From IMG/VR virus record IMGVR_UViG_3300023202_000247, positions 186,001 to 250,000 of that record: a stretch of DNA of 64,000 nt; one strand, written 5' to 3'. Shown here one piece after another: positions 5,901-28,074 of the stretch. A model generated the notes under the pieces. The model ran no database searches, was not told where the DNA came from, and saw only the letters and a list, made by a program, of their open reading frames with translations. Both the position numbers and the translations under genes were made by a program. The first letter of the stretch is position 1, and each line of letters starts with the position of its first letter.

Positions 5901-6195
5901 TGAAATTGATGAGGTTCAAGAAGCGCCGGTGCCGGGTGAAAACCCATATGATGAACCCGATGGTGGTGACATGGGTGGCGGTATGGGTGGCGGTATGGGT
6001 GGAATGCCCGGAGGGGGCGGTGGTTCGCCTTTGGGATTGCCACCACCTCCGGGTGGCGCTCCATCTGCACCGATTGGTGGTGGCGGTGGGCGTCCACCAG
6101 GAACCGGCAGTGGACCCGCTGGAGTTCCGGGACCGCCTGGTGGTGGTACGGGAATCGGGCCCGGAAATATTCCGAAGCCACCGTCTCCAACTTGA
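2980..6195 (+). CDS. portal protein containing an intein, with a G/P-rich disordered C-terminal tail
   Basis: Follows terminase; portal-like segments (NPIVQNAITLH, LGECF, PYEIRGTGLI, IPEIDW); intein at residues 376-779. Confidence 0.85.
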   Translation: MKSRAEQLMEWRASNPPRITTSKGLSDYRKFALEQDIENGRYQETAFGNQHRMGDQNFQFSNYVLPSKLSDFAGDGPSIAGAITYSSNRKRIKNAAGGDAGAFTTDQSTSLNGANSGWRGMTSTTRQIPEVYSPLWLNSNLNLPRDRATINAWCRTFFALNPIVQNAITLHSTYPIAKLNIKCKDPQKEKFYAQMAEELQLMNICSQIAQEFWTLGECFVFAEYDERTAKWSRLLIQNPDYITVQRSTLAGEPIISLRPDENLRRMVNSNRPADIQQRRQLSKEIVDHVRKGENIPLNNFNISHLARRISPYEIRGTGLIVNSFRQLMLFDKLRESKFAQADNMINPLTLIKIGDVGKGFFPNPSDLQQWREIFECHDEETEVLTSEGFKKLEDVISYEEKMDGTFGTSHISNVSAKRGVKIACFNPETENLEYHEPSEAHIYNYHGEMIHFKNDKMDIKVTPNHDMWVQSKKFTGTGKDRTWKWGDWKKIPAGKLSDKLWDKRFRSSVKWDGDDSLKNVDVSGTQVPAELYLEMLGYVISEGCIYSDDNDAFVGIYQNTKLNNGSVNEHYPVMKQCVEKFSSIVNSRYCYEKCTPASIEKNTQEKWSFRIHSKEIFAHFKEQVGTDDGHKSMFKKVPNWVLNLSPRLLKILLNALVRGDGSDNPRENYYTSSKRLADDVYEIAYKCGYTPTMFVRDDDNYLYRYGKSQEARNKLYTVCWSNSEIGNYPITYKYNVDPRTKEKRNLVEKVHYNGKVWCFTVPTGLFVTRRNGKITIQGNSAQYDKDFKVFTHDGVSVERIGYAQGIYDISNDVQQLIKEIYIGLMVPSVVMDGSDTTYATGSVALDVLRQRYMQFRNMLSHFLKEKIFAPIAKLNDFYEYVDGVKTLIIPEIDWNHMSLFDMSDYIQNISNLAQGEGLAKKVSLQTLYRSLGLEYDDEMRKIRYEDIQDTIRSKELAALQQYPLNELRALGRDDEIDEVQEAPVPGENPYDEPDGGDMGGGMGGGMGGMPGGGGGSPLGLPPPPGGAPSAPIGGGGGRPPGTGSGPAGVPGPPGGGTGIGPGNIPKPPSPT
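4105..5316 (+). mobile_element. intein with LAGLIDADG homing endonuclease (404 aa) in the portal
   Basis: Starts CHDEETEVLTSEG; block B VTPNH; LAGLIDADG-like LGYVISEG and LVRGDG; ends VWCFTVPTGLFVTRRNGKITIQGN followed by Ser+1. Confidence 0.92.
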
Positions 6196-10040: not shown

Positions 10041-10353
10041 TAAAAATATGTTCGAGCGCAGAGTGAAGCTTGCTCAAATGACGTTGAACATGGGTGATCC
10101 GTCATTGGCTGGTCGTGGAATTGCTGACATCGTCAAATTTTTGATGCAACGTGTACCACCAGAAGATTACAAACGTTTATTGGGCAGATTGAGACAAAAA
10201 GTTCATTCTTTAAATGAAAGAGAAATTGCAAGTATAAATTTGAACTCAGGCTCTGCAATAGGACAGTCTATTACATTTATCAAAAATGTTTTGATGGGAC
10301 ATAATTCTACATACATTCGACAAGTTATAAACAATATAGTGAGAAATTTATAA
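10027..10353 (+). CDS. hypothetical helical protein
   Basis: Overlapping, coupled gene; contains VKLAQ. Confidence 0.6.
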   Translation: MTIIDKNMFERRVKLAQMTLNMGDPSLAGRGIADIVKFLMQRVPPEDYKRLLGRLRQKVHSLNEREIASINLNSGSAIGQSITFIKNVLMGHNSTYIRQVINNIVRNL

Positions 10354-11462
10354 TGCCTGTACGATTTGCAAAAGTTGATGATAATCTTTATAGGGGTGGA
10401 GCACCGTCTATAAACGAATTACACACTTTAAACAATCTAGGTATAAAAAAGATAATTAGCTTGGATGGTATAATTGGCAACGGTTTAAAGCCATTTTGTG
10501 AAAAATTTGGTATCGAACACATCATCTTACCTTTGGGTGGAGGGGCCGAGCCTGAAATGAATGCTTTGCCCGGCGAAGTTGTTCAATGGCAAAGTGGTGG
10601 TCCAACTTTTGTTCACTGTAGGCATGGAAAAGATAGAACTGGTGTTGCTATTGCTTTATATAGAATATTGGTTCAAGGTTGGAACGTTGATTCTGCCATA
10701 TCCGAAGCAAAAAGATTTGGAATTGGTGCTGGACTAGATCCTGAAAGTGCGCAGGAATATGTTGATGCGATAAGAAGACTAAGCGGCAATTCTGATTCTA
10801 ATTCTGTTAAAGACATAGTAACTACTCAAAGAGATAAAATGGATTGGGTTCAACCATCTCCCGGTGGAGATAATGCGTCAGACCCAATGTGGGAGCAGCA
10901 AAGCTTTGCACCTTTTTTGGGTAAAGATGATTATTTGAACAGACCTGCTTCTATGTTGGAAAACATGGAAAGGTTGAGAACGATTGCAATGAAAAAGCTT
11001 GCTAAAAATATGTTGGTGTTCAAGTATTGTAAACCGTCCGATGTGTACAGGTGGGATTCAATGTGGTTTACCGATATGACTGCGGCAAGAAAACAAAATG
11101 AAAATGATAAAGATGCTAGAATGTTTTCTGCTGACATAGATGATTTTAATTCAATTGAGTATCCACAAGAATATGATAAAACATTGTTGAAGTCTGCTAT
11201 CATGCATGATGCAGATGTAGTTATTTTTCAACCACGTACCGTAAATTATCAGCAGGTTTTTGCCGTGGATTCAACCGCTTTGTCAAATGTTAGGCAAATT
11301 GGCAAGCCTCCCGGAGATATAAACAATCTTCCATATGTTGGACAGCATGACAATTATACGGGAATGGCACCATTCGTGTTTCCCGGTAGTGGAGGTTCGA
11401 TGGGTGGCGGCAGTGGTGGATATGCTGGTACGGTGCAGCTACCATTCGGTAGAACTAATTGA
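10353..11462 (+). CDS. protein tyrosine / dual-specificity (Siw14-like) phosphatase domain protein
   Basis: NLYRGGAP, LGIKKIISL and the CX5R active-site loop VHCRHGKDRTG. Confidence 0.85.
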   Translation: MPVRFAKVDDNLYRGGAPSINELHTLNNLGIKKIISLDGIIGNGLKPFCEKFGIEHIILPLGGGAEPEMNALPGEVVQWQSGGPTFVHCRHGKDRTGVAIALYRILVQGWNVDSAISEAKRFGIGAGLDPESAQEYVDAIRRLSGNSDSNSVKDIVTTQRDKMDWVQPSPGGDNASDPMWEQQSFAPFLGKDDYLNRPASMLENMERLRTIAMKKLAKNMLVFKYCKPSDVYRWDSMWFTDMTAARKQNENDKDARMFSADIDDFNSIEYPQEYDKTLLKSAIMHDADVVIFQPRTVNYQQVFAVDSTALSNVRQIGKPPGDINNLPYVGQHDNYTGMAPFVFPGSGGSMGGGSGGYAGTVQLPFGRTN

Positions 11463-12166: not shown

Positions 12167-12318
12167 TAATTAAGAAGAGCAAAGTAAAAATAGTTGATGT
12201 TATCAAAGATGATGAACATGATATAGATGATGAAGGAACGCGCGATGCTATGAAACGCGCATCTGATGAATTGGAACAAGAGAAGAAAGGCGTCTCTAAA
12301 AAAGATATGGTGAATTGA
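12163..12318 (+). CDS. small acidic protein (51 aa, not in the ORF track)
   Basis: MIIKKSKVKIVDVIKDDEHDIDDEG...; ATGA overlap upstream and TGATG overlap downstream fill the gap exactly. Confidence 0.65.
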   Translation: MIIKKSKVKIVDVIKDDEHDIDDEGTRDAMKRASDELEQEKKGVSKKDMVN

Positions 12319-15300
12319 TGATTATCAAATTGGGAGAAGCTATAGCTATTGAACATAGCGATATCAAAACAGCAGATGCTGCATTGTCTGATCCGGATGT
12401 TTTGGAACGATTTAAAAAGTTCGCAAATGAACTAAAAATAATCGCGCCTCGAGCAAAAGACTTTTTATATTTTTCAGCTGTAATGATGCATGCAGCTGAA
12501 GCTTCATTATTGGATGATGAAGGCAATATTAAAAAGCTTGCTGATGGTAAAGAGGTAGAAGCTTATTGGGATAAAAAAGGCAATAGTTGGAAATGGGTTT
12601 GTAATGACCCAAATATAATGCCTTATAAGAATAGCAATAATGACATTTTTCCAGAAGAAGAGCTTTTAAAGGCTCATAAATTATGGAGAGGAAGGCCGCT
12701 CTGCTTGGATCACAAGTCATCGAGCGCCGATTTTGTCAGAGGCTTGGTTTTAGACACACTCTACGATGAGAAAAACAAAAGAGTCGTAGCCCTTTGCGCT
12801 TTGGATAAGAAACTCTATCCAGAATTGGCAAGGAAAGTACAAACTGGATATGCAACATCAGTATCGATGGGTACTGCGGTTGGCCGAGCTGTTTGTTCGG
12901 ACTGTGGAAAAGTTGCTCGCGTTGAGCGTGATTTCTGCGATCACATGCGCAAAAAGAGCTGCTACGGCGAGATTAACCTCGACCTTTCACCCATGGAATT
13001 GAGCATCGTAGTAAATGGTGCAGATCCAAAAGCAAAAATTAAGCATATTATTGCAAAAAAGGTAGAGAAGGCAACAGAACATTTGGAAGAATACTTGCAA
13101 GGTAAGCTTTCCCAAGGTGGATTGAATAAAAACGAGCTACTTCAGATTCAAGAAGAACTCAAAAATTTGTCCACCAGAGTTGCAAAACTCGCAGAGTCGG
13201 ATGAGGATTCGAATGATACCAATTATGGTACGACCGAATCAGCAAAGACGATGATGGGTCCTGGCTACGTTGATAGCGCAAACCCACCACCAAACCCACC
13301 AGAGCAAGTTGTAAGTTACAATGATAATAAATTGCTCAAAGATTTAACAAAGAAACTCTCTGAAATTCAAGCTGGCTTGAATCAATTTAAAACTACTGAT
13401 AATGAGGAATCAATGGGAAACAAAAAGAATGCATATTTCCAAGGCACAGAAGAGCCTACTCCGGGCCAGCCGCAATATCCAAAGGAAGATTACGAAACCA
13501 TTCGTGACACTCAGGACAAGCAAATGGTTGGTCAATCACCGTTTCCCGGTGTTGGACCAGTTGATGGCATGTATCCTGGTTACGATAGCTTTGGTGAAAG
13601 CGAAGAGGCACGCAAGCGTCGTCTCCAGCGCCTAGCAGAGCTAAATGAGCGTCGTTTGGTTCGTCAATCAGCTTTGGAGAAGGCCAAAGAAAATATTACC
13701 AATTCCAAGGAATCATGGTTCCAAGGTGGTGGCGATGTAAATGAGCCGAAACCACAACCAAAGGACAAGCCACGCGGAGAGCCGGGCAGCTATGACCTTC
13801 GTTATCCAAACGAGACTGATTATCGTAAAATTCGTGACACGGAAGATAAGCAAATGGTTGGTCAGAAGCCGTTTCCGGGGGTTGGAGACGTTGATGGTCT
13901 ACACCCAAGCCCAGAGTCGGTTAGTGAAAAGGATGAGGCAAAACGTAAAGAAATGCTTAGCCGTGCCAAGGTTACCGCGAAATTTGTCAAAGCCTCTGAT
14001 GACAAAGGTATCGATGACAAAGCAAATTGTCGTTGGCAGGTGTTTGCTAACAACAAGTTGATTCTCGATGCAACTGTTGATGAGATTTCACGTGGCAACG
14101 TTGACGGATTGTACGATGCAATTGCAACCCGTGATTACGGATTGAAGATTCTTGATACGATTCAGCGTCAAGGTTTTAATAAAGCAAAGGCAATGTTCAA
14201 GGGTGCACAGACTCCTGCTCAGGATATGGGTGCTCCAGGCGTTGCGCAAGACGCAATGCCAGCAATGCCAGACATGCCAGTGGAGCTTGACAAAGAGCCA
14301 AGGTTAGAGGAGCCGGAAGGCGCTGGCGATGTTGATGACAACGTTGCAGGAATTGCAGCTGATGTTCGCGACTTGGCCGATCAGGTATCTCGCCGTGCAG
14401 ATGACCTAGCAGAAGCAGCTGACAAGATGGATAACGAGGAGCTAGCTGATGTTCCTGCCGTCGAGGAAGATGCGTTTACAGAATCGATGCCAAAGGGTGC
14501 AAGTATCGATAAACTACAAGGTATGCGTAAGACTGTAAATGGTATGGTTCGCAATGCTTTGAGAGAGTCCCGCTCGCAACTTTTGTCTCACGCTGAGGAA
14601 TTGCAGTATTGCAAAGAAATCACTTCTGAAAAGAAAGCCTTTGCTAGTTTGAAGCCAGAACAACGCAAACATCTTTCTCAATTACTTTCCGAAGCTGTTG
14701 CTCATGCGAAGGCAGACTTGGATGAATCCAAGATAGCAATGGCTGCGTTCAACAAGTACGCATATGGAACACATCAGTTGGTGAAGTCGGCAGCTGCTCG
14801 TAATCGAATCATGAAGCAGGCTCAAGAAAAGGCTGAAACTATGGATGTCAAGGTCGATGACTCGAACGACATCGACGATTTGCCATCTATCGAAGAAATT
14901 TTGAACAACAAGAAACAGAATCTCTTGGATCCGAAATCAAAGCAAGAGGTTGAGGTTCCAAAGACTGATATTGGTGCAAAGAAACCAGAAGAAGATGTTC
15001 CTGCTCCGGAGCCAACAGCTTATGCAGCTGATGGAACTGTGGTTGAGCTACCAAAGGGTACTCCGGCTAAGGATTTGATAAACCTACCGGAAGGTACCAC
15101 TATAGCAAACAAGGAGTTTGATTTGAATACTAAGGAGGGTCGAGCACAATACAGGGCCAAGCAGGCTCAAACGGGCGTACAGTTCAGCGACATGATTGAT
15201 CGTGCGCACCCACAAGGCGGCCACACACCTGGCATGATGGACATCAAGCCAGAGGGTAATTTGGCAGAGGTTGAAACAATCAAGGGTACTCATGAGGGTA

Positions 15301-15860
15301 TGATGAAGGTTGTCGAGACTGAGCCAAAGGCTGCAAAGCAGGCGCAGCGCATTGCTGAGCTAGTTAGAATTGGTAAAATTTCTCATGATCAGGTTGATAA
15401 CTTGGTCTCTGAGGGAGTTGATCCAAAGGCTGTACAGTATTACAAGCAATACTGGGCCGAGGCTGGCGACAGTGAGAGCAAAGAATGGGCAGCTGATTTG
15501 GTTAAAGAAACCACTCAGAAGAAAGCCGCTGAAGAGCGCGCAGCGTATGAGGTTCGAATCAAACGTTCGTATGATCTGGCGTACCAGATGTTCAACGCAG
15601 GTCTCATTTCCGAGGCTCAGATTCCAAAGCAGGTTGAGGATATGTCCGATTGGTCTGATAGTGCATACGAGAGCACCAAGCGCATCGTTCAAAACAAGCT
15701 TGCTATGAGAAAGCAAGCACAAATGCCCAACGTTGGAATTTTGAACAACGACGGTATCATTCTGCCAGGCCAAGATTCTTTGGAAAAGACAGCTTCGGCC
15801 GAAGGGGATGTGTCTTTCAAGGAACTATTCGAGGATTATTTCGCAGCGAAGGGTCTCTGA
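12318..15860 (+). CDS. prohead protease fused to a long scaffold/core region
   Basis: N-terminal HK97/assemblin-type motifs (NSNNDIFPEEEL, PLCLDH, SVSMG, Zn ribbon CSDC..CDH, ELSIVVNGADPKAKI); charged coiled-coil C-terminus with an internal repeat DKQMVGQxPFPGVG. Confidence 0.78.
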   Translation: MIIKLGEAIAIEHSDIKTADAALSDPDVLERFKKFANELKIIAPRAKDFLYFSAVMMHAAEASLLDDEGNIKKLADGKEVEAYWDKKGNSWKWVCNDPNIMPYKNSNNDIFPEEELLKAHKLWRGRPLCLDHKSSSADFVRGLVLDTLYDEKNKRVVALCALDKKLYPELARKVQTGYATSVSMGTAVGRAVCSDCGKVARVERDFCDHMRKKSCYGEINLDLSPMELSIVVNGADPKAKIKHIIAKKVEKATEHLEEYLQGKLSQGGLNKNELLQIQEELKNLSTRVAKLAESDEDSNDTNYGTTESAKTMMGPGYVDSANPPPNPPEQVVSYNDNKLLKDLTKKLSEIQAGLNQFKTTDNEESMGNKKNAYFQGTEEPTPGQPQYPKEDYETIRDTQDKQMVGQSPFPGVGPVDGMYPGYDSFGESEEARKRRLQRLAELNERRLVRQSALEKAKENITNSKESWFQGGGDVNEPKPQPKDKPRGEPGSYDLRYPNETDYRKIRDTEDKQMVGQKPFPGVGDVDGLHPSPESVSEKDEAKRKEMLSRAKVTAKFVKASDDKGIDDKANCRWQVFANNKLILDATVDEISRGNVDGLYDAIATRDYGLKILDTIQRQGFNKAKAMFKGAQTPAQDMGAPGVAQDAMPAMPDMPVELDKEPRLEEPEGAGDVDDNVAGIAADVRDLADQVSRRADDLAEAADKMDNEELADVPAVEEDAFTESMPKGASIDKLQGMRKTVNGMVRNALRESRSQLLSHAEELQYCKEITSEKKAFASLKPEQRKHLSQLLSEAVAHAKADLDESKIAMAAFNKYAYGTHQLVKSAAARNRIMKQAQEKAETMDVKVDDSNDIDDLPSIEEILNNKKQNLLDPKSKQEVEVPKTDIGAKKPEEDVPAPEPTAYAADGTVVELPKGTPAKDLINLPEGTTIANKEFDLNTKEGRAQYRAKQAQTGVQFSDMIDRAHPQGGHTPGMMDIKPEGNLAEVETIKGTHEGMMKVVETEPKAAKQAQRIAELVRIGKISHDQVDNLVSEGVDPKAVQYYKQYWAEAGDSESKEWAADLVKETTQKKAAEERAAYEVRIKRSYDLAYQMFNAGLISEAQIPKQVEDMSDWSDSAYESTKRIVQNKLAMRKQAQMPNVGILNNDGIILPGQDSLEKTASAEGDVSFKELFEDYFAAKGL

Positions 15861-15865
15861 GTTGA

Positions 15866-15894
15866 GAGGAGGGGCTAACAGCCCCTCCCATCTC
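15866..15894 (+). promoter_or_regulatory. GC-rich hairpin after the protease/scaffold gene (terminator or stability element)
   Basis: GGAGGGGCT-AAC-AGCCCCTCC stem followed by a T-rich stretch. Confidence 0.55.
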
Positions 15895-15926
15895 ATTTGA
15901 TTTTTCCTTTCATTTTAAAGGTTAAT

Positions 15927-17165
15927 ATGTTTAAAACAAATAACAGCATAGCTGATTTAGTTGCATCGTCTATGGCAGAGCAGATGGATAGCGATGAATT
16001 CCGTAGAATTCATTCTAAGCCGCAGATTAAAACTGCTGCCAAGAAAAAAGATGACAAAGACGAAGAAGATAAAAGCAAGGGTAAGGCTAAGAGCAAGGGT
16101 AAAGGCAAAGACAAGGAAGTAGCTGATAAAGAAAAGGACAAGGATAAGAAGTCCAAGAAAAAGAAGGCTACTACCGTTGGTCGACGTGTAAAGATTGCAG
16201 TTAGTGCTTTAGACAAGCTTAGCGCTGCTTTGGACGAAATTGGTTTCGAAAAGAGCGCAACCATCACCCTTCGTGCTTTGGAGCAGTTGGTCCTCGAGGC
16301 CCAAGAGTATGTTGCTGATACTCACATGGCTGATGACAAAGAAGATAAAGACGATAAAAAGAAGGACGATGATAAAGACGACAAAGATGATGACAAGGAA
16401 GATAAAGACGACAAAGACGACAAAGACGACAAAAAGGATGATGACAAAAAAGAAAAGGATGATGACGACGATAAGAATGATGCCGGAGAAAAGAACTATT
16501 CTGATTTGACAAGTCCAGATGAGCGTCGTGAAGCCTTGGAGCGCAAGCGTGAAAAGGACAAGTCTCCTTCCGAGCATTTTGATAAAGCAAAGAACGTTCG
16601 CGAGTTTACACCGGGTAGCAAAGATGACCCAAAGAACCGCAATGATGCTGATGACAGTTGTGCTGACGATAATTGTGCAGGGGAGAAGGATCACGGGTTG
16701 GATATGAAAACTCGTCAAGATGCTTTAAACCGTAGATACAGAGGTGAGCATGATCCTTCTAAGAGCACTCCAAAAGCGAAAAACGTTCGTGAATTTACAC
16801 CAGGCGGAAAAGACGACCCAAAAAACAAAAACAAAGATAAGAGTGATGCCGCTGACGGTAGCTCAATCGAAATAAAGGTCAGAGACGTTCCGGGTTATGG
16901 CGATACCAATTACGTTGATGATCCAGATGTGGATTTCCCAGATTACAAGCCATCAGAAGATGAAGAGTTGACCAAGGATGAAATCGATGGTGGAATCGAC
17001 CTAAAGCTTGATATTGACAGTGATGACCTCGAAGAAATTTTGAGTGAGCTTGGTATTGCATATGATGGAGATGATGGAGATGATGAGCCTGATTTTGACA
17101 AAGATGATGAAGAGCCAAAAAGCCTTCATTTTGATGCAAATGATGGTGGACACCCAAAAGCGTAA
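15927..17165 (+). CDS. highly charged D/K-rich low-complexity head protein (short form)
   Basis: Likely start ATG 15927; DDK runs; internal repeat KAKNVREFTPGxKDDPKN x2. Confidence 0.7.
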   Translation: MFKTNNSIADLVASSMAEQMDSDEFRRIHSKPQIKTAAKKKDDKDEEDKSKGKAKSKGKGKDKEVADKEKDKDKKSKKKKATTVGRRVKIAVSALDKLSAALDEIGFEKSATITLRALEQLVLEAQEYVADTHMADDKEDKDDKKKDDDKDDKDDDKEDKDDKDDKDDKKDDDKKEKDDDDDKNDAGEKNYSDLTSPDERREALERKREKDKSPSEHFDKAKNVREFTPGSKDDPKNRNDADDSCADDNCAGEKDHGLDMKTRQDALNRRYRGEHDPSKSTPKAKNVREFTPGGKDDPKNKNKDKSDAADGSSIEIKVRDVPGYGDTNYVDDPDVDFPDYKPSEDEELTKDEIDGGIDLKLDIDSDDLEEILSELGIAYDGDDGDDEPDFDKDDEEPKSLHFDANDGGHPKA

Positions 17166-17419
17166 CTGCCAGTGATAAAGACCGCGGGGGATTCATATTC
17201 CCCGCGTCTCATCCAAAGGTAAAAAAGGGAGATCATTTTCCCATAAATACTGAGGGTAGGGCACGCAATGCGCTGGCAAGAGCAAATCAATATAGTAGCG
17301 CTCCAGATTGGTGGAGTGGTTCGTTGAGTGAATTAGTTAATGCTGTTGCAAGGGCTGTGAAAAAAAAGTATCCGGGCATAGATGTCAGCGAAAAATCAAA
17401 GAAGCCAGGTAAAGGATGA
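17153..17419 (+). CDS. -1 frame extension (88 codons) of the preceding gene, encoding a HFPINTEGRARNALARANQY domain
   Basis: Open frame with no in-frame ATG, entered at the C CCA AAA heptamer; its TGA overlaps the ATG of the next gene. Confidence 0.7.
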   Translation, partial: PKSVTASDKDRGGFIFPASHPKVKKGDHFPINTEGRARNALARANQYSSAPDWWSGSLSELVNAVARAVKKKYPGIDVSEKSKKPGKG

Positions 17420-17634
17420 TAAAATTTAAACAAAGTGAAAGTGCTGATTTAATTGCAGAAGCTATGAGAAGAGTTGAGCTCGAGTCTAAAGCTGAAACAG
17501 CAACACATGCAAACAAAATATCAAGAGCATATGAGTGTTTAAATGAGGCCGCCGAATTGTATGAAAATTTGGGCAATCATGAAATGGCAAAATATATAAC
17601 TGATGCAATGCATTATTTTCAAGGTGGAAAATGA
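17416..17634 (+). CDS. small helical protein
   Basis: ATGA overlaps; LNEAAELYE resembles LSEAAANFE of the next gene. Confidence 0.6.
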   Translation: MIKFKQSESADLIAEAMRRVELESKAETATHANKISRAYECLNEAAELYENLGNHEMAKYITDAMHYFQGGK

Positions 17635-17975
17635 GCGTAAAGTGGTTGCAAAATAACTTCGAAGATGAGATTGTCGATACATTCGAATCGTGTTTGGAAA
17701 AAGTTGCAAACGAATTCGAAACAAGAGATAAGAAAACAGAACTGAAGGCTATGGAGTTGCTATCAGAAGCAGCAGCAAATTTTGAGCTATCTGGTAAAAA
17801 TAAAGAGGCAAATATAGTTAAAGTTTTGATTGCGACTACATGTAAAGTAGAGAATCCAAAAAACCCAGGTAAAACAAAAAAAGAAAAAGAAATGTATAAA
17901 TTCTTTGGTTATAACAATGCAAAAGATAAAGACATTGATGATGCCGATGATGAGGAATATTGGGAAGACGACTAA
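17631..17975 (+). CDS. small helical protein with acidic tail
   Basis: ATGA overlap; followed by a terminator. Confidence 0.6.
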   Translation: MSVKWLQNNFEDEIVDTFESCLEKVANEFETRDKKTELKAMELLSEAAANFELSGKNKEANIVKVLIATTCKVENPKNPGKTKKEKEMYKFFGYNNAKDKDIDDADDEEYWEDD

Positions 17976-18001
17976 ATTTGACAATAAAGATAATACAAAA
18001 T

Positions 18002-18034
18002 AAAAGCACATGCAAATGCATGTGCTTTTTTTTT
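18002..18034 (+). terminator. rho-independent terminator
   Basis: AAAAGCACATGC-AAAT-GCATGTGCTTTT plus a T run. Confidence 0.8.
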
Positions 18035-18083
18035 ATAAATAATCTCATATATTTATGGATATATTGTTTTGAGAGGTTATTGA

Positions 18084-18776
18084 ATGTCACTAAAAATAGT
18101 ACAAGCGGGATATGCATTACCAACGGAGTTTCCGGTTGATCCGAATGCTCAGTTCGAGCCGGGCAACATAGGGCAACTTGGTGTAAATGGTAATAACATC
18201 GTATGTGGTGTTAGCGACGGAACGGCTCCAATAGGAATAATTGATGACATAAAAACTGTTGCTTTTACTGCACAATCAATAGATGAAGAGGTAATTGCAC
18301 CGGCAGTTGGTGTAGAATCACATGGTGAAATTGTTTCAGCAATGGATGTGAAACAAGAGTTGAGAAATCCCAATGTTGTCAAATCTAGTTTCGTAACCAA
18401 CCCTGTCAATGTTATTTTGATTCCTAGAAACGGAATGATTATTTTCCCAGCCGGTACGCCTTTAAATATAGATTTGGATGGAGATGGTATTCCAGATGCT
18501 ATTCGCACGATTGTGAGCTATTCATATCAAGTTCCAAACATTCCCGGCGATGACAGCACACAAGCAAGCGGAAAGGTTACCATTTGGTTTCAAAGAATGT
18601 TTGCTCAAACAGATAGATTCGAAGCAAACCAACGTTACCCAATCAACGCTAACTTGTTTGTAAATGAGAGTGGTTTGTTGACTACCAGGCAACCAACGGA
18701 GACACATCCTGGTGTTGCAATAGTAACAGGTTCCCCAGGACCAATATTTGATAGTTTAGAGTTTATGTGGCTTTGA
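18084..18776 (+). CDS. capsid decoration/cement-like protein (paralogue 1)
   Basis: Shares PxGxIDD, ASGKxTxW and LxxxxxGLLT motifs with 26068..26757. Confidence 0.6.
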   Translation: MSLKIVQAGYALPTEFPVDPNAQFEPGNIGQLGVNGNNIVCGVSDGTAPIGIIDDIKTVAFTAQSIDEEVIAPAVGVESHGEIVSAMDVKQELRNPNVVKSSFVTNPVNVILIPRNGMIIFPAGTPLNIDLDGDGIPDAIRTIVSYSYQVPNIPGDDSTQASGKVTIWFQRMFAQTDRFEANQRYPINANLFVNESGLLTTRQPTETHPGVAIVTGSPGPIFDSLEFMWL

Positions 18777-19180
18777 TGTTTAAAATAGTTGATGGTATTA
18801 CAGATCCTGTTAAAATGTTCGTAGCGCCCGGCGTTAGATTCGAGCCGGGATGCATCGTTGAGTTTAAGGAAATTGACGGTATATTTGTTGCTGATTTGAG
18901 CCACAACTGTGGAACATCCATCGGTATAATTTCAGAGTCAATTTTTATCGATGATAATAAAGTAAGTCTTCATCCAGAAGATAGAGCATCTGTTTTTATA
19001 GAACGAATGGTTTTTAGAACAAATAACTGTGAACCTGGAGATTATAGAACTGGTGATAAATTATATGTTAGCAGTAATGGTTTATTCACTTTGGAAGAGC
19101 CACAAGAAGACTCACCATTTGTTGGAAGAGTTATAAGTAAATTAAAAAAAGACAATGTATTTGAAGCGTTGTGGCTGTAG
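18776..19180 (+). CDS. capsid decoration-like protein (paralogue 2, short)
   Basis: FEPG, GDKLYVSSNGLFT and C-terminal ExxWL shared with the upstream gene. Confidence 0.55.
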   Translation: MFKIVDGITDPVKMFVAPGVRFEPGCIVEFKEIDGIFVADLSHNCGTSIGIISESIFIDDNKVSLHPEDRASVFIERMVFRTNNCEPGDYRTGDKLYVSSNGLFTLEEPQEDSPFVGRVISKLKKDNVFEALWL

Positions 19181-19570: not shown

Positions 19571-22500
19571 ATGACTTTGAAGCATGTAAAATTTCACCAA
19601 AGCGAAGTGATGCGCGAGTTGGAAAGACAAGCAACTCGTAAAGGCCACTTCGAACCATCTCCAAAAGAAACTGTTGATGCAGCTGCAAACAAAGCAGCGC
19701 AAAGCTTCATACCAACCAGAACTGGTAATTGGTATAATGATACGATGAACTTAGTTACCGCTCTTCGCAATGCTGGTTATGAAAAATCAGCTGCGGATAT
19801 CGAGGAGAAGGCTACGAACATGAAATTTGCCGAAGTTCATTTGTACAAGGCAATTGATGAAGATGGCGATGCTTTCATGGATTATGCTCATCCGGAAGGC
19901 GACACGGAGATAATTCCGGCTCAAGACGGGCGAGGAAAAGTTGAAAGAACAACCACAACTCATGACAAGATGCTGGATGTTTTGCACAAAAAGCCAACTG
20001 GAAAGCTTTCTGGAGAGGCTAATTTTGTTTTGAATCGTGAGGTCAAAGAAGCCGCTTTGGATGTTTTAAAAACGGCCCAAGATGTGGGTGTGATTGACAA
20101 GATTAAAAAAAAATTTGAATCTATTCAAAATATAATAAACAATGCTGGTAGTATCGTATCTGATATATCATTAAATTTTGGAAATATAATAAATAAAATA
20201 TTTCATGGTAATGCATCTGCCGTTGCATTGTATGTAAAGTATTCAGATGCTACGATGCAACAACTGCAAAATTTAATATACGCTTATAGATTCTTTTATT
20301 GGAATGGTTCCAAGTATGTAGTTAATACAAAGCAAGCAAACAGTGTAATTAGCTCACATGCTTTAAAGAATCAAAATGCATTGAGAGCAGCTTGCAAAGC
20401 TGTAGGTGTTGATGCTGATCCATATCTCAGAGCGCCTGATGGTTCAGGCTCGGTACCTCTCACATCTGCAAATAAGGCGGCAGAACTTGCTGGTAAGGTA
20501 TTGGCAGGTACCAATCATCTTTGGAACATGACATTTGGAGACTCTATTGTTAGAGAGGCAAATGAAAACTTGAAGAAAGTTTATAATGCTTTTGTTGCAG
20601 AGATGAAAACAAGTTTGCCAGTAACATCAGAGGGTATTTTTGATCGTGGTGAAATTAACTATTCTGTAGCTGTGAATAAACTAAGAAATGCAAGAAAATC
20701 ACTAGATTCAGTTTATGAACAGGGAAGCAATGCATCCAAGTTGTTTGAAATATACGAGGTATTTTCGGCGGATGAGGCGATGAATTTGCAAAAGATATTT
20801 ACCGATTTGAAGTCCAATATCGATGAAGCATTGAAGCTCATCGTAACTCAAAGCAAACAATATGGAAAAACATTCGAAGGTATCAACAGCTGGATATCTC
20901 AGGTTGCGCGTCTAAAGAAATTGTCTTTGGAGCAACGCGCAGCTTTGCCCGAAGGTTCCGAGGAACGCAAGGCAGCATATACCAACTATATAGCTGCAAA
21001 AAAAATGGAAAGCATTCTCAATGGTTTGAAAGGTAAGAGCTGGCTCGAGATTCGTTCTGTTTTGCAAGAGAACTATCAACTATATGAAACGCCAGAAGAC
21101 TTTCAAAAAGATATCGATTCCTTCAAGGCAAAGGTTTTGGGAAAAGGTGAGTCAGCAGAGGCTTCTGACGGACTTGCAACAGTTGCATCTTTGGTAAAAG
21201 CAGCCGGAGCATTTGGTGATCAGGCAAAAACTATAAAGCCTGTTTCAACAAAAACAGAACCAAAAGCAGCTCCAAAATCCACACCGGGGCAGTCGGTTCA
21301 ACGCAAAGGTCCGGTAGCAACATCTGCGGTTCCAGAAGAGGAGCAACGAGCGGTTGCACAAATGCAAAAGGTTCTCACCGAGATTTCAACTCAAATGACG
21401 CAAAATGCTGAAAACATCGCGCGTGATTTGGCACCGATGCATGACCAATCATTGCGCGGATTAACACCCGATCAGGTAAGACAGAGTGCTGCTGTAATTG
21501 GAGCAACCGGCAAGGGAACTGGTACACCTTTCGATGGTCTATGGGGTCCAAAAACTATTCGTGCTTTAGAAGAAGTAAATAGTTATGTCCAACGTGTAAA
21601 CAAATTGGAAGGTAAAAATTTACCAGCTGTGCTTCCCGGTAGCCATTATCGTCAAACAGACACCAGTAAAACGCTAGAAGATGCTGATGCGAATGTTACT
21701 GCTTTACTTGAATTTAGCAAAACAATGGGATTCAGTGTTACTGGTCCAGATGGTAGCAAGACTGAAATATCTGATTACGATCATATTCCGCAAACGTTGA
21801 CTCGCCAAAATGTTTTGGATACTGGTGATTTGACTGTTCGAAGTGTTGATGTTCAATCTTTGGAAGCATTTTATGCGTTTCTCGAGCACACCATCAATCG
21901 TACAGCAAACACAAATGCAGAGTTGGTATCCAAGGGACAGTATGGTGAAATTACTGATACTGATCAATCTGGAAAGAAAACAACTCATACCATTCGCACA
22001 ACACTTGATGATGAGCCAAAACAAGAGGGGTTTGGAACAGTTACTTGGAGACAGTTTAATGACTATCTAAAGTGGTTCGCTTATCGTGTAAACATGTTGT
22101 ATAGCAAAGCAAAGCGTGAAGGCGCTGATGCTGCTGATGTTCAAAGACTAACAGCATACAAAGATTCAATCGATGCTTTGAGTATCAAATGGTTGAAGCT
22201 CAAGCGTTGGCTCGAGCAAAACAGAGTTGATTTGGATAAATCATACGTTAGCTTTGAAGCTTTGAAAATTGTTGATACTCACCTTGGACGAAGCGGTCGC
22301 GGTCGTGAAGTTGGTGTAGGTAGAGGTAGAGGTAGAGGTAGAGGTAGAGGTAGAGGTAGAGGTAGAGGTAGAGGTAGAGGTGAAGGAGATATGGAGGGTT
22401 ACCAATATTATGATCCGGGTGTTGTCGGTGGAAGAAGCGGGCCGCTTTATGCTCCATTTTCAAATAATATGAATATGATTCAAATTGCTAAAGATTTTGG

Positions 22501-22849
22501 TTTGAATGACAGTGAAAAATTCTATGATAGAATGGCAAATCCGGTCATCAACTATGACTCGTTTGGTGGTCGGATTGATTCACTCATTAGAATGTATTTG
22601 CCAGAAGATTTGCTTGCACAAGTTGATGCAGGACAAAGAGACCCGCGTCAATTCTTGCTAAGCATGATCCGAAGATTGACTATTGATTTCAACAAAATAT
22701 ACAAAACTTGGATTCAAGAAGCTCAAACCAAGCTTCCGAAAGGTGAAAGGGTTAGCGCTTTGATGAAGAATCAAAGAGGTAACTATAATGCATGGCATCG
22801 TAGATTAGATTACTTGGAGAAGCGTATAAGGCGCAACATGGAGAGCTGA
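19571..22849 (+). CDS. large putative internal virion protein with a peptidoglycan-binding-like motif and an RG repeat
   Basis: DGLWGPKTIRAL resembles the PG_binding_1 consensus; (GR)10; multiple K-x-A sites. Confidence 0.6.
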   Translation: MTLKHVKFHQSEVMRELERQATRKGHFEPSPKETVDAAANKAAQSFIPTRTGNWYNDTMNLVTALRNAGYEKSAADIEEKATNMKFAEVHLYKAIDEDGDAFMDYAHPEGDTEIIPAQDGRGKVERTTTTHDKMLDVLHKKPTGKLSGEANFVLNREVKEAALDVLKTAQDVGVIDKIKKKFESIQNIINNAGSIVSDISLNFGNIINKIFHGNASAVALYVKYSDATMQQLQNLIYAYRFFYWNGSKYVVNTKQANSVISSHALKNQNALRAACKAVGVDADPYLRAPDGSGSVPLTSANKAAELAGKVLAGTNHLWNMTFGDSIVREANENLKKVYNAFVAEMKTSLPVTSEGIFDRGEINYSVAVNKLRNARKSLDSVYEQGSNASKLFEIYEVFSADEAMNLQKIFTDLKSNIDEALKLIVTQSKQYGKTFEGINSWISQVARLKKLSLEQRAALPEGSEERKAAYTNYIAAKKMESILNGLKGKSWLEIRSVLQENYQLYETPEDFQKDIDSFKAKVLGKGESAEASDGLATVASLVKAAGAFGDQAKTIKPVSTKTEPKAAPKSTPGQSVQRKGPVATSAVPEEEQRAVAQMQKVLTEISTQMTQNAENIARDLAPMHDQSLRGLTPDQVRQSAAVIGATGKGTGTPFDGLWGPKTIRALEEVNSYVQRVNKLEGKNLPAVLPGSHYRQTDTSKTLEDADANVTALLEFSKTMGFSVTGPDGSKTEISDYDHIPQTLTRQNVLDTGDLTVRSVDVQSLEAFYAFLEHTINRTANTNAELVSKGQYGEITDTDQSGKKTTHTIRTTLDDEPKQEGFGTVTWRQFNDYLKWFAYRVNMLYSKAKREGADAADVQRLTAYKDSIDALSIKWLKLKRWLEQNRVDLDKSYVSFEALKIVDTHLGRSGRGREVGVGRGRGRGRGRGRGRGRGRGRGEGDMEGYQYYDPGVVGGRSGPLYAPFSNNMNMIQIAKDFGLNDSEKFYDRMANPVINYDSFGGRIDSLIRMYLPEDLLAQVDAGQRDPRQFLLSMIRRLTIDFNKIYKTWIQEAQTKLPKGERVSALMKNQRGNYNAWHRRLDYLEKRIRRNMES
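22319..22381 (+). repeat. perfect (GGTAGA)10 microsatellite encoding (Gly-Arg)10
   Basis: Directly visible in the sequence. Confidence 0.95.
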
Positions 22850-26908: not shown

Positions 26909-27922
26909 ATGAGTTTATTTACCCAATCAGGCGAGTCGAATGGAGTTAGCGTAAAGGACGCTCTCGACACTCTCGTCAAATATGCAGCAATTATTGAAGA
27001 GAATCAGCCGTCCAATGCGGCTCTCGCTGGTCGTCCAAGTTTGAACGACGACAAGCGTGATGAGTTGATTTCTCGCGCAATCCTAACTAACGAGGGTAAG
27101 GTTGCTCTTGCTCAGGCAATGGCCAACCCAATTCGTCGCAACCTTGATTACCAGGGTATTGCACGTCGTGCCCTAGTCGTTGATCCACTACCACAGGGTG
27201 CAACTCCAACATATGACCGTGATATCGACGTTGCGGCAGTTGTGGTTTCCAGCAATGGTGCTGGTCCTGAGAGCCGTGTGTTCGGCGACCGCGTGGTTGT
27301 TCCAACATTCGAGCTTTTGTCGAACCCAACCGTTCGTATCTCTGAGGTACGTCGTCGTAGGTTCAACGTAATTGACCGTGCCGTTCAGAAGGCGCGTCAA
27401 GAGATCATGGCGCAAGAGGACGCGAACATTTTCGCAGCTCTTGATAACGCTGGTACCGTCGAAAACACCGCACAGGATATTTCGGATGGTGGTCTGTTGA
27501 AGCGTGACCTTGTTGAAATCAAGGTCCAGATTGATCGCTGGGACCTTGTAACAACCAAGTTCTTCATGAACATCAATGAGTTTACTGATATCCTCAACTG
27601 GGGATCCGGCGGTGGTCAGGGACCAACCGGTGGTGAGGTAGACCCGGTTACTCAGCGTGAAATTCTACAGACTGGTTTGTACGCTCACATCTGGGGCGCG
27701 GACCTCATGGTCTCGAAGATCGTTCCACCTGGCACTGTTTACGGTTGTGCAGACCCAGAGTTTGTGGGTGTGATGCCGATTCGCCAGGACATTGAGGTTA
27801 TGCCTGCGGACGAGCCGAAACAGCTAAAACTAGGTTGGGTTGTTTCCGAGGAAATCGGAATCGGCATCGTCAACGCTCGCGGTGTTGCTCTTGGTCGCAA
27901 GAGCACCGTAGTTGGCGCGTAA
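26909..27922 (+). CDS. major capsid protein (HK97 fold)
   Basis: GGAG SD; LDYQGIARRALVVDPLPQG..YD, IMAQED, TGLYAHIWGADLMVSKIVPPGTVY; biased codon usage; followed by a terminator. Confidence 0.9.
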   Translation: MSLFTQSGESNGVSVKDALDTLVKYAAIIEENQPSNAALAGRPSLNDDKRDELISRAILTNEGKVALAQAMANPIRRNLDYQGIARRALVVDPLPQGATPTYDRDIDVAAVVVSSNGAGPESRVFGDRVVVPTFELLSNPTVRISEVRRRRFNVIDRAVQKARQEIMAQEDANIFAALDNAGTVENTAQDISDGGLLKRDLVEIKVQIDRWDLVTTKFFMNINEFTDILNWGSGGGQGPTGGEVDPVTQREILQTGLYAHIWGADLMVSKIVPPGTVYGCADPEFVGVMPIRQDIEVMPADEPKQLKLGWVVSEEIGIGIVNARGVALGRKSTVVGA

Positions 27923-27970: not shown

Positions 27971-28010
27971 AAAAAGGGTCGGTGTTGAAACACCGACCCT
28001 TTTTCGTTTT
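27971..28010 (+). terminator. rho-independent terminator after the major capsid gene
   Basis: AAAAAGGGTCGGTGT-TGAA-ACACCGACCCTTTTT. Confidence 0.85.
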
Positions 28011-28074
28011 TCCACACACCCAAATGAACCCAAACAATTTGTCGAGTCATATTATATTATCATGTATATATTGT

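What the first reader, a model, noticed from the sequence alone, without database searches (positions are those of the whole stretch)
17141..17419. Hidden -1 programmed frameshift appends a folded domain to the D/K-rich head protein
Seen: the gene ends CAC CCA AAA GCG TAA, containing the X XXY YYZ heptamer C CCA AAA (17153-17159). The -1 frame is closed just upstream (TGA 17141), has no ATG, and runs 88 codons (PKSVTASDKDRGGFIFPASHPKVKKGDHFPINTEGRARNALARANQYSSAPDWWSG...KKKYPGI...) to a TGA that overlaps the next ATG. Seven nt after the heptamer, TGCCAGTG (17167-17174) can pair with CGCTGGCA (17271-17278), enclosing a strong CGCGGGG/CCCCGCG hairpin (17183-17206) and a weaker one (17227-17242), which would form a multi-branch stimulator. 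Established: CCCAAAA drives -1 shifts in structural genes of Lactobacillus phage A2. Inference: two protein isoforms are made at a fixed ratio.
Basis: partly seen in the sequence, partly recalled or inferred. Interest (0 to 1): 0.7.

Follow-up and report, generated by a model that had tools for sequence, protein, structure and literature searches.

The report
Programmed -1 frameshift in jumbo-phage head gene
A charged head-module protein of a 321-kb uncultured phage most likely gets an extra 86-residue folded domain in a fraction of its copies, because ribosomes slip back one base at C CCA AAA just before the stop codon; it is a well-supported new example of a known trick, conserved in relatives.

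Summary
The gene at 15927-17165 ends CAC CCA AAA GCG TAA. The heptamer C_CCA_AAA (17153-17159) is in the register needed for a -1 slip. The -1 frame is open from 17144 to TGA 17417-17419. It has no ATG, GTG or TTG before 17323. It encodes a DUF6582-like domain that has 181 homologues.

Four run-specific assemblies, one at about 215x, and a variant strain from another study give the same junction, so it is not an assembly indel.

Homologues of the upstream protein come in two forms. In some the domain is fused in frame (L011, L012, L039, L053). In others it sits in the -1 frame with no usable start, and there is always an in-register slippery heptamer 1-3 codons before the stop: C_CCA_AAA in L040, L051 and L002/3, T_TTA_AAA in L052, C_CCT_TTT_TTC in L046/7, A_AAA_AAG in L048/9.

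The start-less frame is under strong purifying selection (window vs L002: pN 0.15, pS 0.94).

A stable RNA structure begins 7-9 nt after the heptamer in the window, L040, L051 and L052 (z -4.4 to -5.0). It shows compensatory changes. It is absent from 32 of 33 fused or stand-alone loci.

Verdict: a genuine, conserved -1 programmed frameshift, and a new member of a known kind. Slip efficiency and the domain's function are untested.

The parts
15927..17165 (+). 0-frame gene: a 412-aa Asp/Lys-rich protein (the short product). ATG 15927 is the likely start, because homologues begin at the equivalent M-x-K.
   Evidence: ORF and translation. Family alignment A2 with L040, L002, L011, L012 and P0125. 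Shared mid-protein motif of the type ISAALDEIGFEKSA.
17141..17143 (+). TGA that closes the -1 frame upstream. It limits any productive shift to 17144-17162.
17153..17159 (+). Slippery heptamer C_CCA_AAA in X_XXY_YYZ register. The predicted junction is ...GGHPK|SVTAS...
   Evidence: Sequence. Register check. The same heptamer in the same register occurs in L040, L051 and L002/L003.
17163..17165 (+). 0-frame stop TAA, one codon after the heptamer.
   Evidence: In all -1 type relatives the stop lies 1-3 codons after the heptamer.
17159..17419 (+). -1 frame extension: 86 codons from AGC 17159 to TGA 17417-17419. It encodes a DUF6582-like domain. The long product is about 497 aa.
   Evidence: Translation P0001. 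181 homologues. Pfam DUF6582 E 0.013, with 10 of 33 family members hitting it. Protein-atlas nearest clusters are DUF6582. dN/dS. AlphaFold2 model.
17167..17174 (+). 5' arm of the outer helix of the predicted stimulator. It starts 7 nt after the heptamer.
   Evidence: MFE fold. In L040, two substitutions (17166 C>T, 17272 G>A) extend and strengthen this helix.
17271..17278 (+). 3' arm of the outer helix.
17183..17206 (+). Strong 9-bp GC-rich hairpin inside the outer helix, over the codons for R-G-G-F-I-F-P-A.
   Evidence: L052 keeps it with two C-G to A-U compensatory pairs.
17227..17242 (+). Second, weaker hairpin, over the codons for G-D-H-F-P.
   Evidence: Present, and longer, in L051 and L052.
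17416..17634 (+). Next gene (72 aa). Its ATG overlaps the TGA of the -1 frame (ATGA).
   Evidence: The same arrangement occurs in L040.

Best explanation
This is a programmed -1 ribosomal frameshift. Most ribosomes translating the Asp/Lys-rich gene (15927-17165) stop at TAA 17163 and make a 412-aa protein. With CCA in the P site and AAA in the A site, a fraction slip back one base on C_CCA_AAA (17153-17159). They then read AGC GTA ACT and onward in the -1 frame to TGA 17417. This gives a protein of about 497 aa whose last roughly 75 residues form a small DUF6582-like domain of two short strands and two helices with a basic tail.

A stable multi-branch RNA structure starts 7 nt after the heptamer, and the 0-frame stop lies one codon downstream. 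Both probably raise slip efficiency.

The result would be two forms of a scaffold-position head-module protein, one with and one without a C-terminal binding module, in a ratio set by the slip efficiency.

Shown here: the sequence architecture, its reproducibility across assemblies, its conservation in relatives, purifying selection on the start-less frame, and the locus-specific RNA structure.

Inferred: that slippage actually occurs, how often it occurs, and what the domain binds.
For: 1. Architecture. The heptamer is in register. The productive window is only 7 codons. The -1 frame has no start codon before the domain core.

2. The extension is a real protein. It has 181 homologues and belongs to DUF6582 by weak Pfam hits and protein-atlas neighbours. 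The AlphaFold2 model has pLDDT 78.6.

3. Purifying selection acts in the -1 frame, in lineages that all lack a start. Window vs L002: pN 0.147, pS 0.94, and 55 of 76 differences fall at third positions. Reading the same alignment in the other two frames gives pN > pS. Window vs L040: dN/dS 0.18.

4. Orthologues of the upstream protein carry the domain fused in frame in L011, L039, L012 and L053. So the trans-frame product reproduces a natural architecture.

5. Six lineages have the domain in the -1 frame. None has a start that would give the whole domain: four have none at all, and the GTG codons in L046/7 and L048/9 would cut off its start. All have an in-register slippery heptamer 1-3 codons before the stop:
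- window and L040: C_CCA_AAA
- L051: C_CCA_AAA
- L002/L003: C_CCA_AAA
- L052: T_TTA_AAA
- L046/L047: C_CCT_TTT_TTC
- L048/L049: A_AAA_AAG
. L046 and L052 carry the family's mid-protein motif; L048/9's upstream gene is cut off by the contig end and was not assigned to the family. Three of these pairs come from two separate samples each.

6. The background rate of in-register heptamers is about 1% per codon.

7. The codon before CCA varies in amino acid (His, Tyr, Ser, Cys) but always ends in C, and Pro is always CCA. Meanwhile synonymous sites between these lineages are saturated.

8. RNA structure. The z-scores for the homologous 131-nt segment are -5.0 (window), -4.4 (L040), -4.8 (L051), -4.4 (L052) and -3.1 (L048). 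The medians of 15 fused and 18 stand-alone loci are -0.1 and -0.5, and only 1 of those 33 falls below -2. The helices begin 7, 8 and 9 nt after the heptamer in the window, L052 and L051. On alignment A3, 5 pairs change on both sides, a count reached by 0 of 500 shuffles.

9. There is no assembly indel.
Against: There is no direct evidence of the trans-frame protein. No proteomics, ribosome profiling or reporter data exist, and no RNA run holding the locus was listed.

The heptamer may partly reflect an ancestral D-P-K-A motif at the start of the domain. The in-frame fused L011 and L026 also have C_CCA_AAA there without needing it, and 8 of 32 non-frameshift loci have some in-register heptamer in the 24 codons before the domain.

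The RNA structure is not universal. L002 and L046 show none (z +0.3 to +0.7). A rank test of z-scores across all frameshift-type against other loci is only p = 0.067.

The strongest hairpin lies 23 nt from the heptamer. Only the long-range outer helix gives the canonical 7-nt spacing. The covariation rests on 4 sequences, 2 of them near-identical.

In L002 the -1 frame begins with GTG 4 nt after GAGG, so independent initiation is conceivable there.

Elsewhere the domain occurs as a stand-alone gene in non-structural neighbourhoods (L004, L050). Its role in the head is therefore a guess.
Confidence: 0.8

Rival explanations
1. The domain is made as a separate small protein. It would arise by non-canonical initiation, or by termination-reinitiation after TAA 17163, and not as a fusion.
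For: Most homologues are stand-alone genes of 100-120 aa with their own ATG. In L002 the -1 frame opens with GTG preceded by GAGG. In L046 and L048 gene callers used a GTG at the conserved Val just before R-x-R-G.
Against: The -1 frame of the window and of L040 has no ATG, GTG or TTG before 17323, which is past the invariant H-F-P...A-R-N-A-L-A-R core. The only near-cognate candidate (ATA 17195) would remove the conserved R-G-x-F-I-F-P strand. The stand-alone homologues all carry an extra N-terminal helix that is missing here. This rival explains neither the obligatory in-register heptamer in six lineages nor the in-frame fused orthologues.
Confidence: 0.07
2. The frame is corrected at the RNA level. 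RNA polymerase slippage (transcriptional realignment) would add or drop a base in the A run, rather than the ribosome slipping.
For: Some relatives have long homopolymers at the junction: A9 in L048/L049, T6 in L046/L047, A9 in L054 and A11 in L050. In the last two the domain is in the +1 frame. Transcriptional slippage on such runs is known (review PMC5009743).
Against: The run in the window is only four A's, far shorter than known slippage-prone tracts (my own knowledge). L051, L002 and L052 likewise have A4. The downstream RNA structure at 7-9 nt spacing fits a ribosomal mechanism.
Confidence: 0.04
3. This is a frameshift mutation that merely truncated a formerly fused gene. The downstream frame would then be an untranslated remnant, or the indel would be an assembly or sequencing error.
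For: In-frame fused orthologues exist (L011, L012, L039, L053), so a single-base indel after the D-P-K-A motif would produce exactly this picture.
Against: The frame has stayed open and under purifying selection across lineages whose synonymous sites are saturated. The arrangement recurs with different heptamers. Four run-specific assemblies and a variant strain agree at the junction. The stop of the -1 frame overlaps the next gene's start (ATGA) in both the window and L040.
Confidence: 0.03

Closest known systems
Lactobacillus phage A2 major head protein gp5A/gp5B, and A2-like phages such as BH1
   Same: A -1 ribosomal frameshift near the end of a head gene yields a C-terminally extended second product (PMC5009743). 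A CCCAAAA slippery sequence is reported in the major head gene of the A2-like phage BH1 (PMC6950654). From memory, the A2 site is C_CCA_AAA with a downstream stem-loop.
   Different: Here the shifted gene is not the major capsid protein, which is at 26909-27922. It is a charged, low-complexity protein in the scaffold position. The extension is DUF6582-like, not Ig-like. The phage is a jumbo phage of more than 320 kb, distantly related to Bacillus phage G. No sequence homology to A2 was sought or found.
T3/T7 capsid proteins 10A/10B and the lambda-like tail chaperones G/GT
   Same: These are conserved -1 frameshifts in phage structural genes. The slip site is close to the 0-frame stop, the two products appear in a fixed ratio, and the shift is conserved across relatives while the heptamer sequence varies (PMC5009743; Xu et al. 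2004 as cited in PMC7260188).
   Different: The gene family and the module differ. Here orthologues alternate between in-frame fusion and frameshift, and stand-alone versions of the domain also exist.
CsoS2A/CsoS2B of alpha-carboxysomes
   Same: It works alike. CsoS2 is needed to form a capsid-like shell and is made in two forms by -1 frameshifting (PMC5009743). That it is a disordered, highly charged scaffold whose two forms differ in a C-terminal shell-binding region is from my own knowledge.
   Different: It is a bacterial organelle protein, not a phage protein. In csoS2 the frameshift gives the shorter form, whereas here it gives the longer one. There is no homology.
Pfam DUF6582 (PF20223)
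   Same: The extension and 10 of 33 close homologues match this model. The best E-value among the homologues is 2e-4, and the window's own is 0.013. One homologue carries a precomputed PF20223 hit. The nearest protein-atlas clusters are DUF6582.
   Different: The window's score of 16.3 bits is below the gathering cut-off of 27.3. The family has no known function, no solved structure and no paper in the library.

Membership tests
-1 programmed ribosomal frameshift site | An X_XXY_YYZ slippery heptamer in register with the upstream (0) frame | tested here: met
   C_CCA_AAA lies at 17153-17159 and its first base is a third codon position.
-1 programmed ribosomal frameshift site | An overlapping -1 frame that is open from the site, lacks its own initiation codon and encodes a functional polypeptide | tested here: met
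   The frame is open from 17144 to 17419 and has no ATG, GTG or TTG before 17323. It has 181 homologues and is under purifying selection.
-1 programmed ribosomal frameshift site | A stimulatory element, normally an RNA structure 5-9 nt downstream (or an upstream SD-like element) | tested here: met
   This rests on prediction only. The helix starts 7 nt after the heptamer and the fold has z -4.7. Equivalent structures occur at 8 and 9 nt in L052 and L051. The structure is specific to frameshift-type loci. Compensatory pairs are seen. The window's upstream GGTGGA is only 2 nt from the heptamer, which is too close to be a dnaX-type stimulator.
-1 programmed ribosomal frameshift site | Conservation of the recoding arrangement in related genomes | tested here: met
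   Six lineages show the arrangement with four different slippery heptamers, and other orthologues are fused in frame.
-1 programmed ribosomal frameshift site | Detection of the trans-frame protein, and dependence on the heptamer | not testable with these tools
   This needs mass spectrometry or a reporter assay. No RNA run holding the locus was listed.
Pfam DUF6582 (PF20223) | A whole-protein score at or above the gathering cut-off (27.3 bits) | tested here: not met
   The score is 16.3 bits, E 0.013. Ten of 33 aligned homologues hit at E <= 0.01, and the protein-atlas neighbours are DUF6582. It is therefore best called a divergent DUF6582-like branch.
Phage scaffolding or internal head protein | The gene lies in the head module between the maturation protease and the major capsid protein, and the protein is present in proheads | tested here: inconclusive
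   Position is met. The gene order is terminase 1113-2963, portal 2980-6195, a protease-like domain in 12315-15860, this gene, then the major head protein 26909-27922. There is no sequence or fold match to any known scaffold. Presence in proheads was not testable.

The most novel reading that the evidence does not exclude
The junction between the charged protein and the DUF6582-like domain could be a recoding hot spot across a whole clade of huge phages. The same domain is attached by in-frame fusion, by -1 slippage on at least four different heptamers, possibly by +1 or transcriptional slippage on A9-A11 runs (L054, L050), or is encoded alone. On this reading, selection acts on the stoichiometry of a still-unknown binding module (for capsid, portal or DNA) inside giant capsids. 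The frameshift would have arisen repeatedly by 'rescuable' indels next to a pre-existing slippery D-P-K codon pair.
Probability: 0.4. Interest if true: 0.65.

Novelty: new member of a known kind. Interest (0 to 1): 0.5.

Why it matters
Standard gene callers miss this domain, or miscall it from a spurious GTG. As a result, a conserved protein isoform of huge phages is absent from annotations.

If confirmed, it adds a frameshift in a scaffold-position gene to the short list of recoding events in phage head assembly.

It also gives DUF6582, a widespread domain with no known function or structure, its first functional handle: a module whose dosage relative to its carrier protein is controlled.

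Finally, the natural set of fused, frameshifted and stand-alone versions is a ready-made comparison for studying how frameshift sites and their RNA stimulators arise.

Tried and rejected
- DNA search of 15800-18800 against cultured phages found no match. tblastn of the domain found only one weak hit, in Streptomyces phage Frankenweenie in a non-structural neighbourhood, which was uninformative.
- Pfam and PHROGs gave nothing for the Asp/Lys-rich protein.
- The PDB sequence-profile search and the Foldseek searches of PDB and AFDB clusters with the domain model gave no significant or named match. The fold and function remain unknown.
- Bacillus phage G is the nearest cultured relative by major head protein (55% identity). 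It has no detectable homologue of the Asp/Lys-rich gene or of the domain.
In viral contigs it found only distant family members without the domain.
- P0125 is a family member whose next gene overlaps it by 34 nt in the -1 frame.
- An upstream SD-like stimulator was looked for. It is plausible in L002 (GAGGA, 12 nt upstream) and L046 (GAGGAG, 14 nt upstream), but not in the window, where GGTGGA is 2 nt upstream. This comes from reading.
- hhalign of the family's mid-protein helix against the N-terminal helix of stand-alone domain proteins gave only a weak match (probability 24%). It is not used as evidence.
- An alternative genetic code was rejected. The 0-frame stop is TAA, and TGA is used as a stop with an ATGA overlap to the next gene.
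- No RNA run was listed.
- The two original phage A2 papers are not held.
- No complex prediction was run, because no specific binding partner is claimed.
Full report
**Context**

The window is bases 186001-250000 of a 321,461-bp IMG/VR virus record. The region is a head-morphogenesis module, with all genes on the + strand:
- large terminase, 1113-2963;
- portal, 2980-6195;
- a tyrosine-phosphatase-like gene, 10353-11462;
- a 1181-aa protein whose N-terminus matches head maturation proteases, 12315-15860 (phrog_18299, E 8e-13);
- the gene in question;
- several small genes;
- a 1092-aa protein;
- the major head protein, 26909-27922 (phrog_2522, E 1e-74).

The nearest cultured relative is Bacillus phage G, at 55% identity for the major head protein. 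The standard genetic code applies. The 0-frame stop is TAA, and TGA ends the -1 frame in an ATGA overlap with the next start.

**The observation**

The gene 15927-17165 encodes a 412-aa protein rich in Asp and Lys. It ends ...GGT GGA CAC CCA AAA GCG TAA.

C_CCA_AAA (17153-17159) is in X_XXY_YYZ register. The -1 frame is closed by TGA 17141-17143 and then open for 91 codons to TGA 17417-17419. It holds no ATG, GTG or TTG before 17323. A productive shift can therefore occur only within seven codons, and the heptamer is the only slippery site there.

The heptamer on its own is not remarkable:
- There are 8 copies in the window against 11.7 expected.
- In-register heptamers occur at 0.8% per codon.
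- A second in-register copy sits at 16817 in the same gene, but its -1 frame closes after five codons.

Among all in-register heptamers of the window, only this one lies next to a stop and leads into a long frame that has no start of its own.

**Not an artefact**

Run-specific Logan contigs of X1 (about 215x), X2 and X3 cover 16900-17450 with no difference and no gap. X4 agrees. X5, from another study, holds a variant with four substitutions and an in-frame 9-nt deletion inside a 9-nt tandem repeat (17062). Its junction is identical.

**The -1 frame encodes a real domain**

P0001 has 181 homologues at E <= 0.01. It matches DUF6582 weakly: Pfam E 0.013, and 10 of 33 relatives hit at up to E 2e-4. 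The nearest protein-atlas clusters are DUF6582.

The AlphaFold2 model (pLDDT 78.6) shows two short strands, two helices and a basic tail. Nothing in PDB or among the AFDB clusters gives a named match.

Selection acts in the -1 frame:
- Window vs L002: pN 0.147 and pS 0.94, with 55 of 76 differences at third positions. The same alignment read in the other two frames gives pN > pS.
- Window vs L040: dN/dS 0.18.

**Comparative evidence for recoding**

The upstream protein belongs to a recognisable family. Its marks are an N-terminal M-x-K...KTAAKK, a charged low-complexity region, and a conserved helix of the type ISAALDEIGFEKSA.

In L011, L039, L012 and L053, members of this family carry the domain fused in frame.

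In six other lineages the domain is in the -1 frame. None has a start that would give the whole domain: four have none at all, and the GTG codons in L046/7 and L048/9 would cut off its start. Each has an in-register slippery heptamer 1-3 codons before the stop:

| Locus | Junction in the 0 frame |
|---|---|
| L040 (93% identical protein, another run) | TAC CCA AAA GCG TAA |
| L051 | AGC CCA AAA GCA TAA |
| L002/L003 | TGC CCA AAA GTC AAA AAG TAA |
| L052 | GAT TTA AAA GAC TGA |
| L046/L047 | CGC CCT TTT TTC GCA AGA TAA |
| L048/L049 | TCA AAA AAA AAG GGT TAG |

.

Three of these were seen in two separate samples each. L048/9's upstream gene is cut off by the contig end, so its membership of the family was not checked.

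With about 1% in-register heptamers per codon and overlap windows of 4-31 codons, finding one in all six lineages by chance is very unlikely. My own arithmetic puts it at roughly 1e-6.

The codon before CCA changes its amino acid (His, Tyr, Ser, Cys) yet always ends in C, and Pro is always CCA. Synonymous sites between these lineages are otherwise saturated.

The heptamer sits at the family's conserved D-P-K-A motif, which opens the domain. The fused L011 and L026 already read GAC/TCC CCA AAA there. A likely origin is therefore an indel just after a pre-existing slippery codon pair, rescued by slippage and then refined. This is inference.

**RNA structure**

L040 keeps it (z -4.9). Two of the 12 substitutions between L040 and the window fall in the outer helix, and both improve pairing.

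L052 and L051 have equally stable, differently built structures (z -5.0 and -5.95). Their first helix starts 8 and 9 nt after the heptamer. L052 keeps the strong hairpin with two C-G to A-U compensatory pairs.

I folded the homologous 131-nt segment of 41 loci:
- Five of eight start-less loci have z <= -3.1.
- Only 1 of 33 fused or stand-alone loci is below -2.
- Counting window and L040 as one lineage, that is 4 of 7 against 1 of 33, and a Fisher test by my own arithmetic gives p of about 0.002.
- A rank test over all loci is weaker, at p = 0.067.

L002 and L046 show no structure. They do have GAGGA or GAGGAG 12-14 nt upstream of the heptamer, which could act as a dnaX-type stimulator or, in L002, as a ribosome-binding site for a GTG start.

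**Mechanism and function**

The best explanation is a -1 programmed ribosomal frameshift that gives a 412-aa product and a product of about 497 aa.

The function of the domain is unknown. It also occurs as a stand-alone gene of 100-120 aa with an N-terminal helix, and at the C-terminus of other large acidic proteins. Some of these lie outside structural modules.

The gene sits after the protease gene and its product is charged and low in complexity. That suggests a scaffold-like or internal head protein whose C-terminal module is needed on only a fraction of the copies. The closest analogue in how it works is CsoS2A/B of carboxysomes. The closest in kind are the capsid frameshifts of phages A2, T3 and T7 and the tail chaperone G/GT (PMC5009743, PMC6950654).

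**Rivals**

- Independent initiation is not possible for the window or L040 without losing conserved structure.
- Transcriptional slippage is unlikely on an A4 run. It is a live option for the A9-A11 junctions of L048, L054 and L050.
- A dead remnant is excluded by the evidence of selection.
- An assembly error is excluded by the independent assemblies.

**Verdict**

It is a new member of a known kind. The trans-frame protein, its ratio to the short form, and the role of the domain remain to be shown experimentally.

Noticed in passing
window 16817-16823: There is a second in-register C_CCA_AAA in the same gene. It lies inside the second copy of an 18-aa repeat, KNVREFTPG(S/G)KDDPKN(R/K)N (16590-16643 and 16779-16832). 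A -1 slip here would terminate after 5 codons, at 16838. It could be a wasteful off-target slip site, or it may be silent for lack of a stimulator.
   Followed up: partly
L054 about 310-330; L050 about 2495-2515: In two relatives the domain is in the +1 frame behind an A9 run (L054, no start) or an A11 run (L050, own ATG directly after the stop). Orthologues of L050's upstream gene (L015, L016, L019, L020, L022) are fused in frame. This could be transcriptional slippage, a +1 shift, or a homopolymer sequencing error.
   Followed up: partly
window 12315-15860: This 1181-aa protein has a prohead-protease-like N-terminal domain (residues about 106-214). The motif DKQMVGQxPFPGVGxVDG is repeated at 13515-13568 and 13845-13898. 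The homologue in L002 has the same repeats. They might be maturation cleavage or docking sites.
   Followed up: no
window 22318-22381: A perfect (AGGTAG)x10.7 tandem repeat encodes (Gly-Arg)10 near the C-terminus of the 1092-aa protein at 19571-22849.
   Followed up: no
window 27982-30048: Directly after the major head protein gene lies a low-GC stretch (28.5% in 28001-30000). It holds a 688-aa ORF with endonuclease, LAGLIDADG and HTH hits, and is probably a homing-endonuclease insertion. The relative L002 also has a LAGLIDADG gene, a little downstream of its frameshift locus.
   Followed up: no
window 10344-10350 and 10353-11462: An in-register AAATTTA heptamer lies two codons before the stop of the ORF that precedes the tyrosine-phosphatase-like gene. 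That gene is in the -1 frame but has its own ATG, so this is probably coincidence. A phosphatase-like gene in the head module is conserved in L002.
   Followed up: no
window 17062-17085: The 9-nt tandem repeat (ATGATGGAG x2.7) encodes DGDDGDD. A variant strain in run X5 lacks one unit (a 9-nt in-frame deletion).
   Followed up: yes
L009 37-2727; L010 1927-5748; L030 1-3543: The DUF6582-like domain also occurs inside very long acidic ORFs of other huge-phage contigs. It appears twice in one ORF of about 900 aa (L009) and in the middle of an ORF of about 1270 codons (L010).
   Followed up: no
L059 10866-12535 (Bacillus phage G, record 19865-21534): The phage G record annotates its endolysin as two CDSs with the same start. 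One is joined from two pieces, which looks like an annotated recoding or splicing event in the head-proximal region.
   Followed up: no
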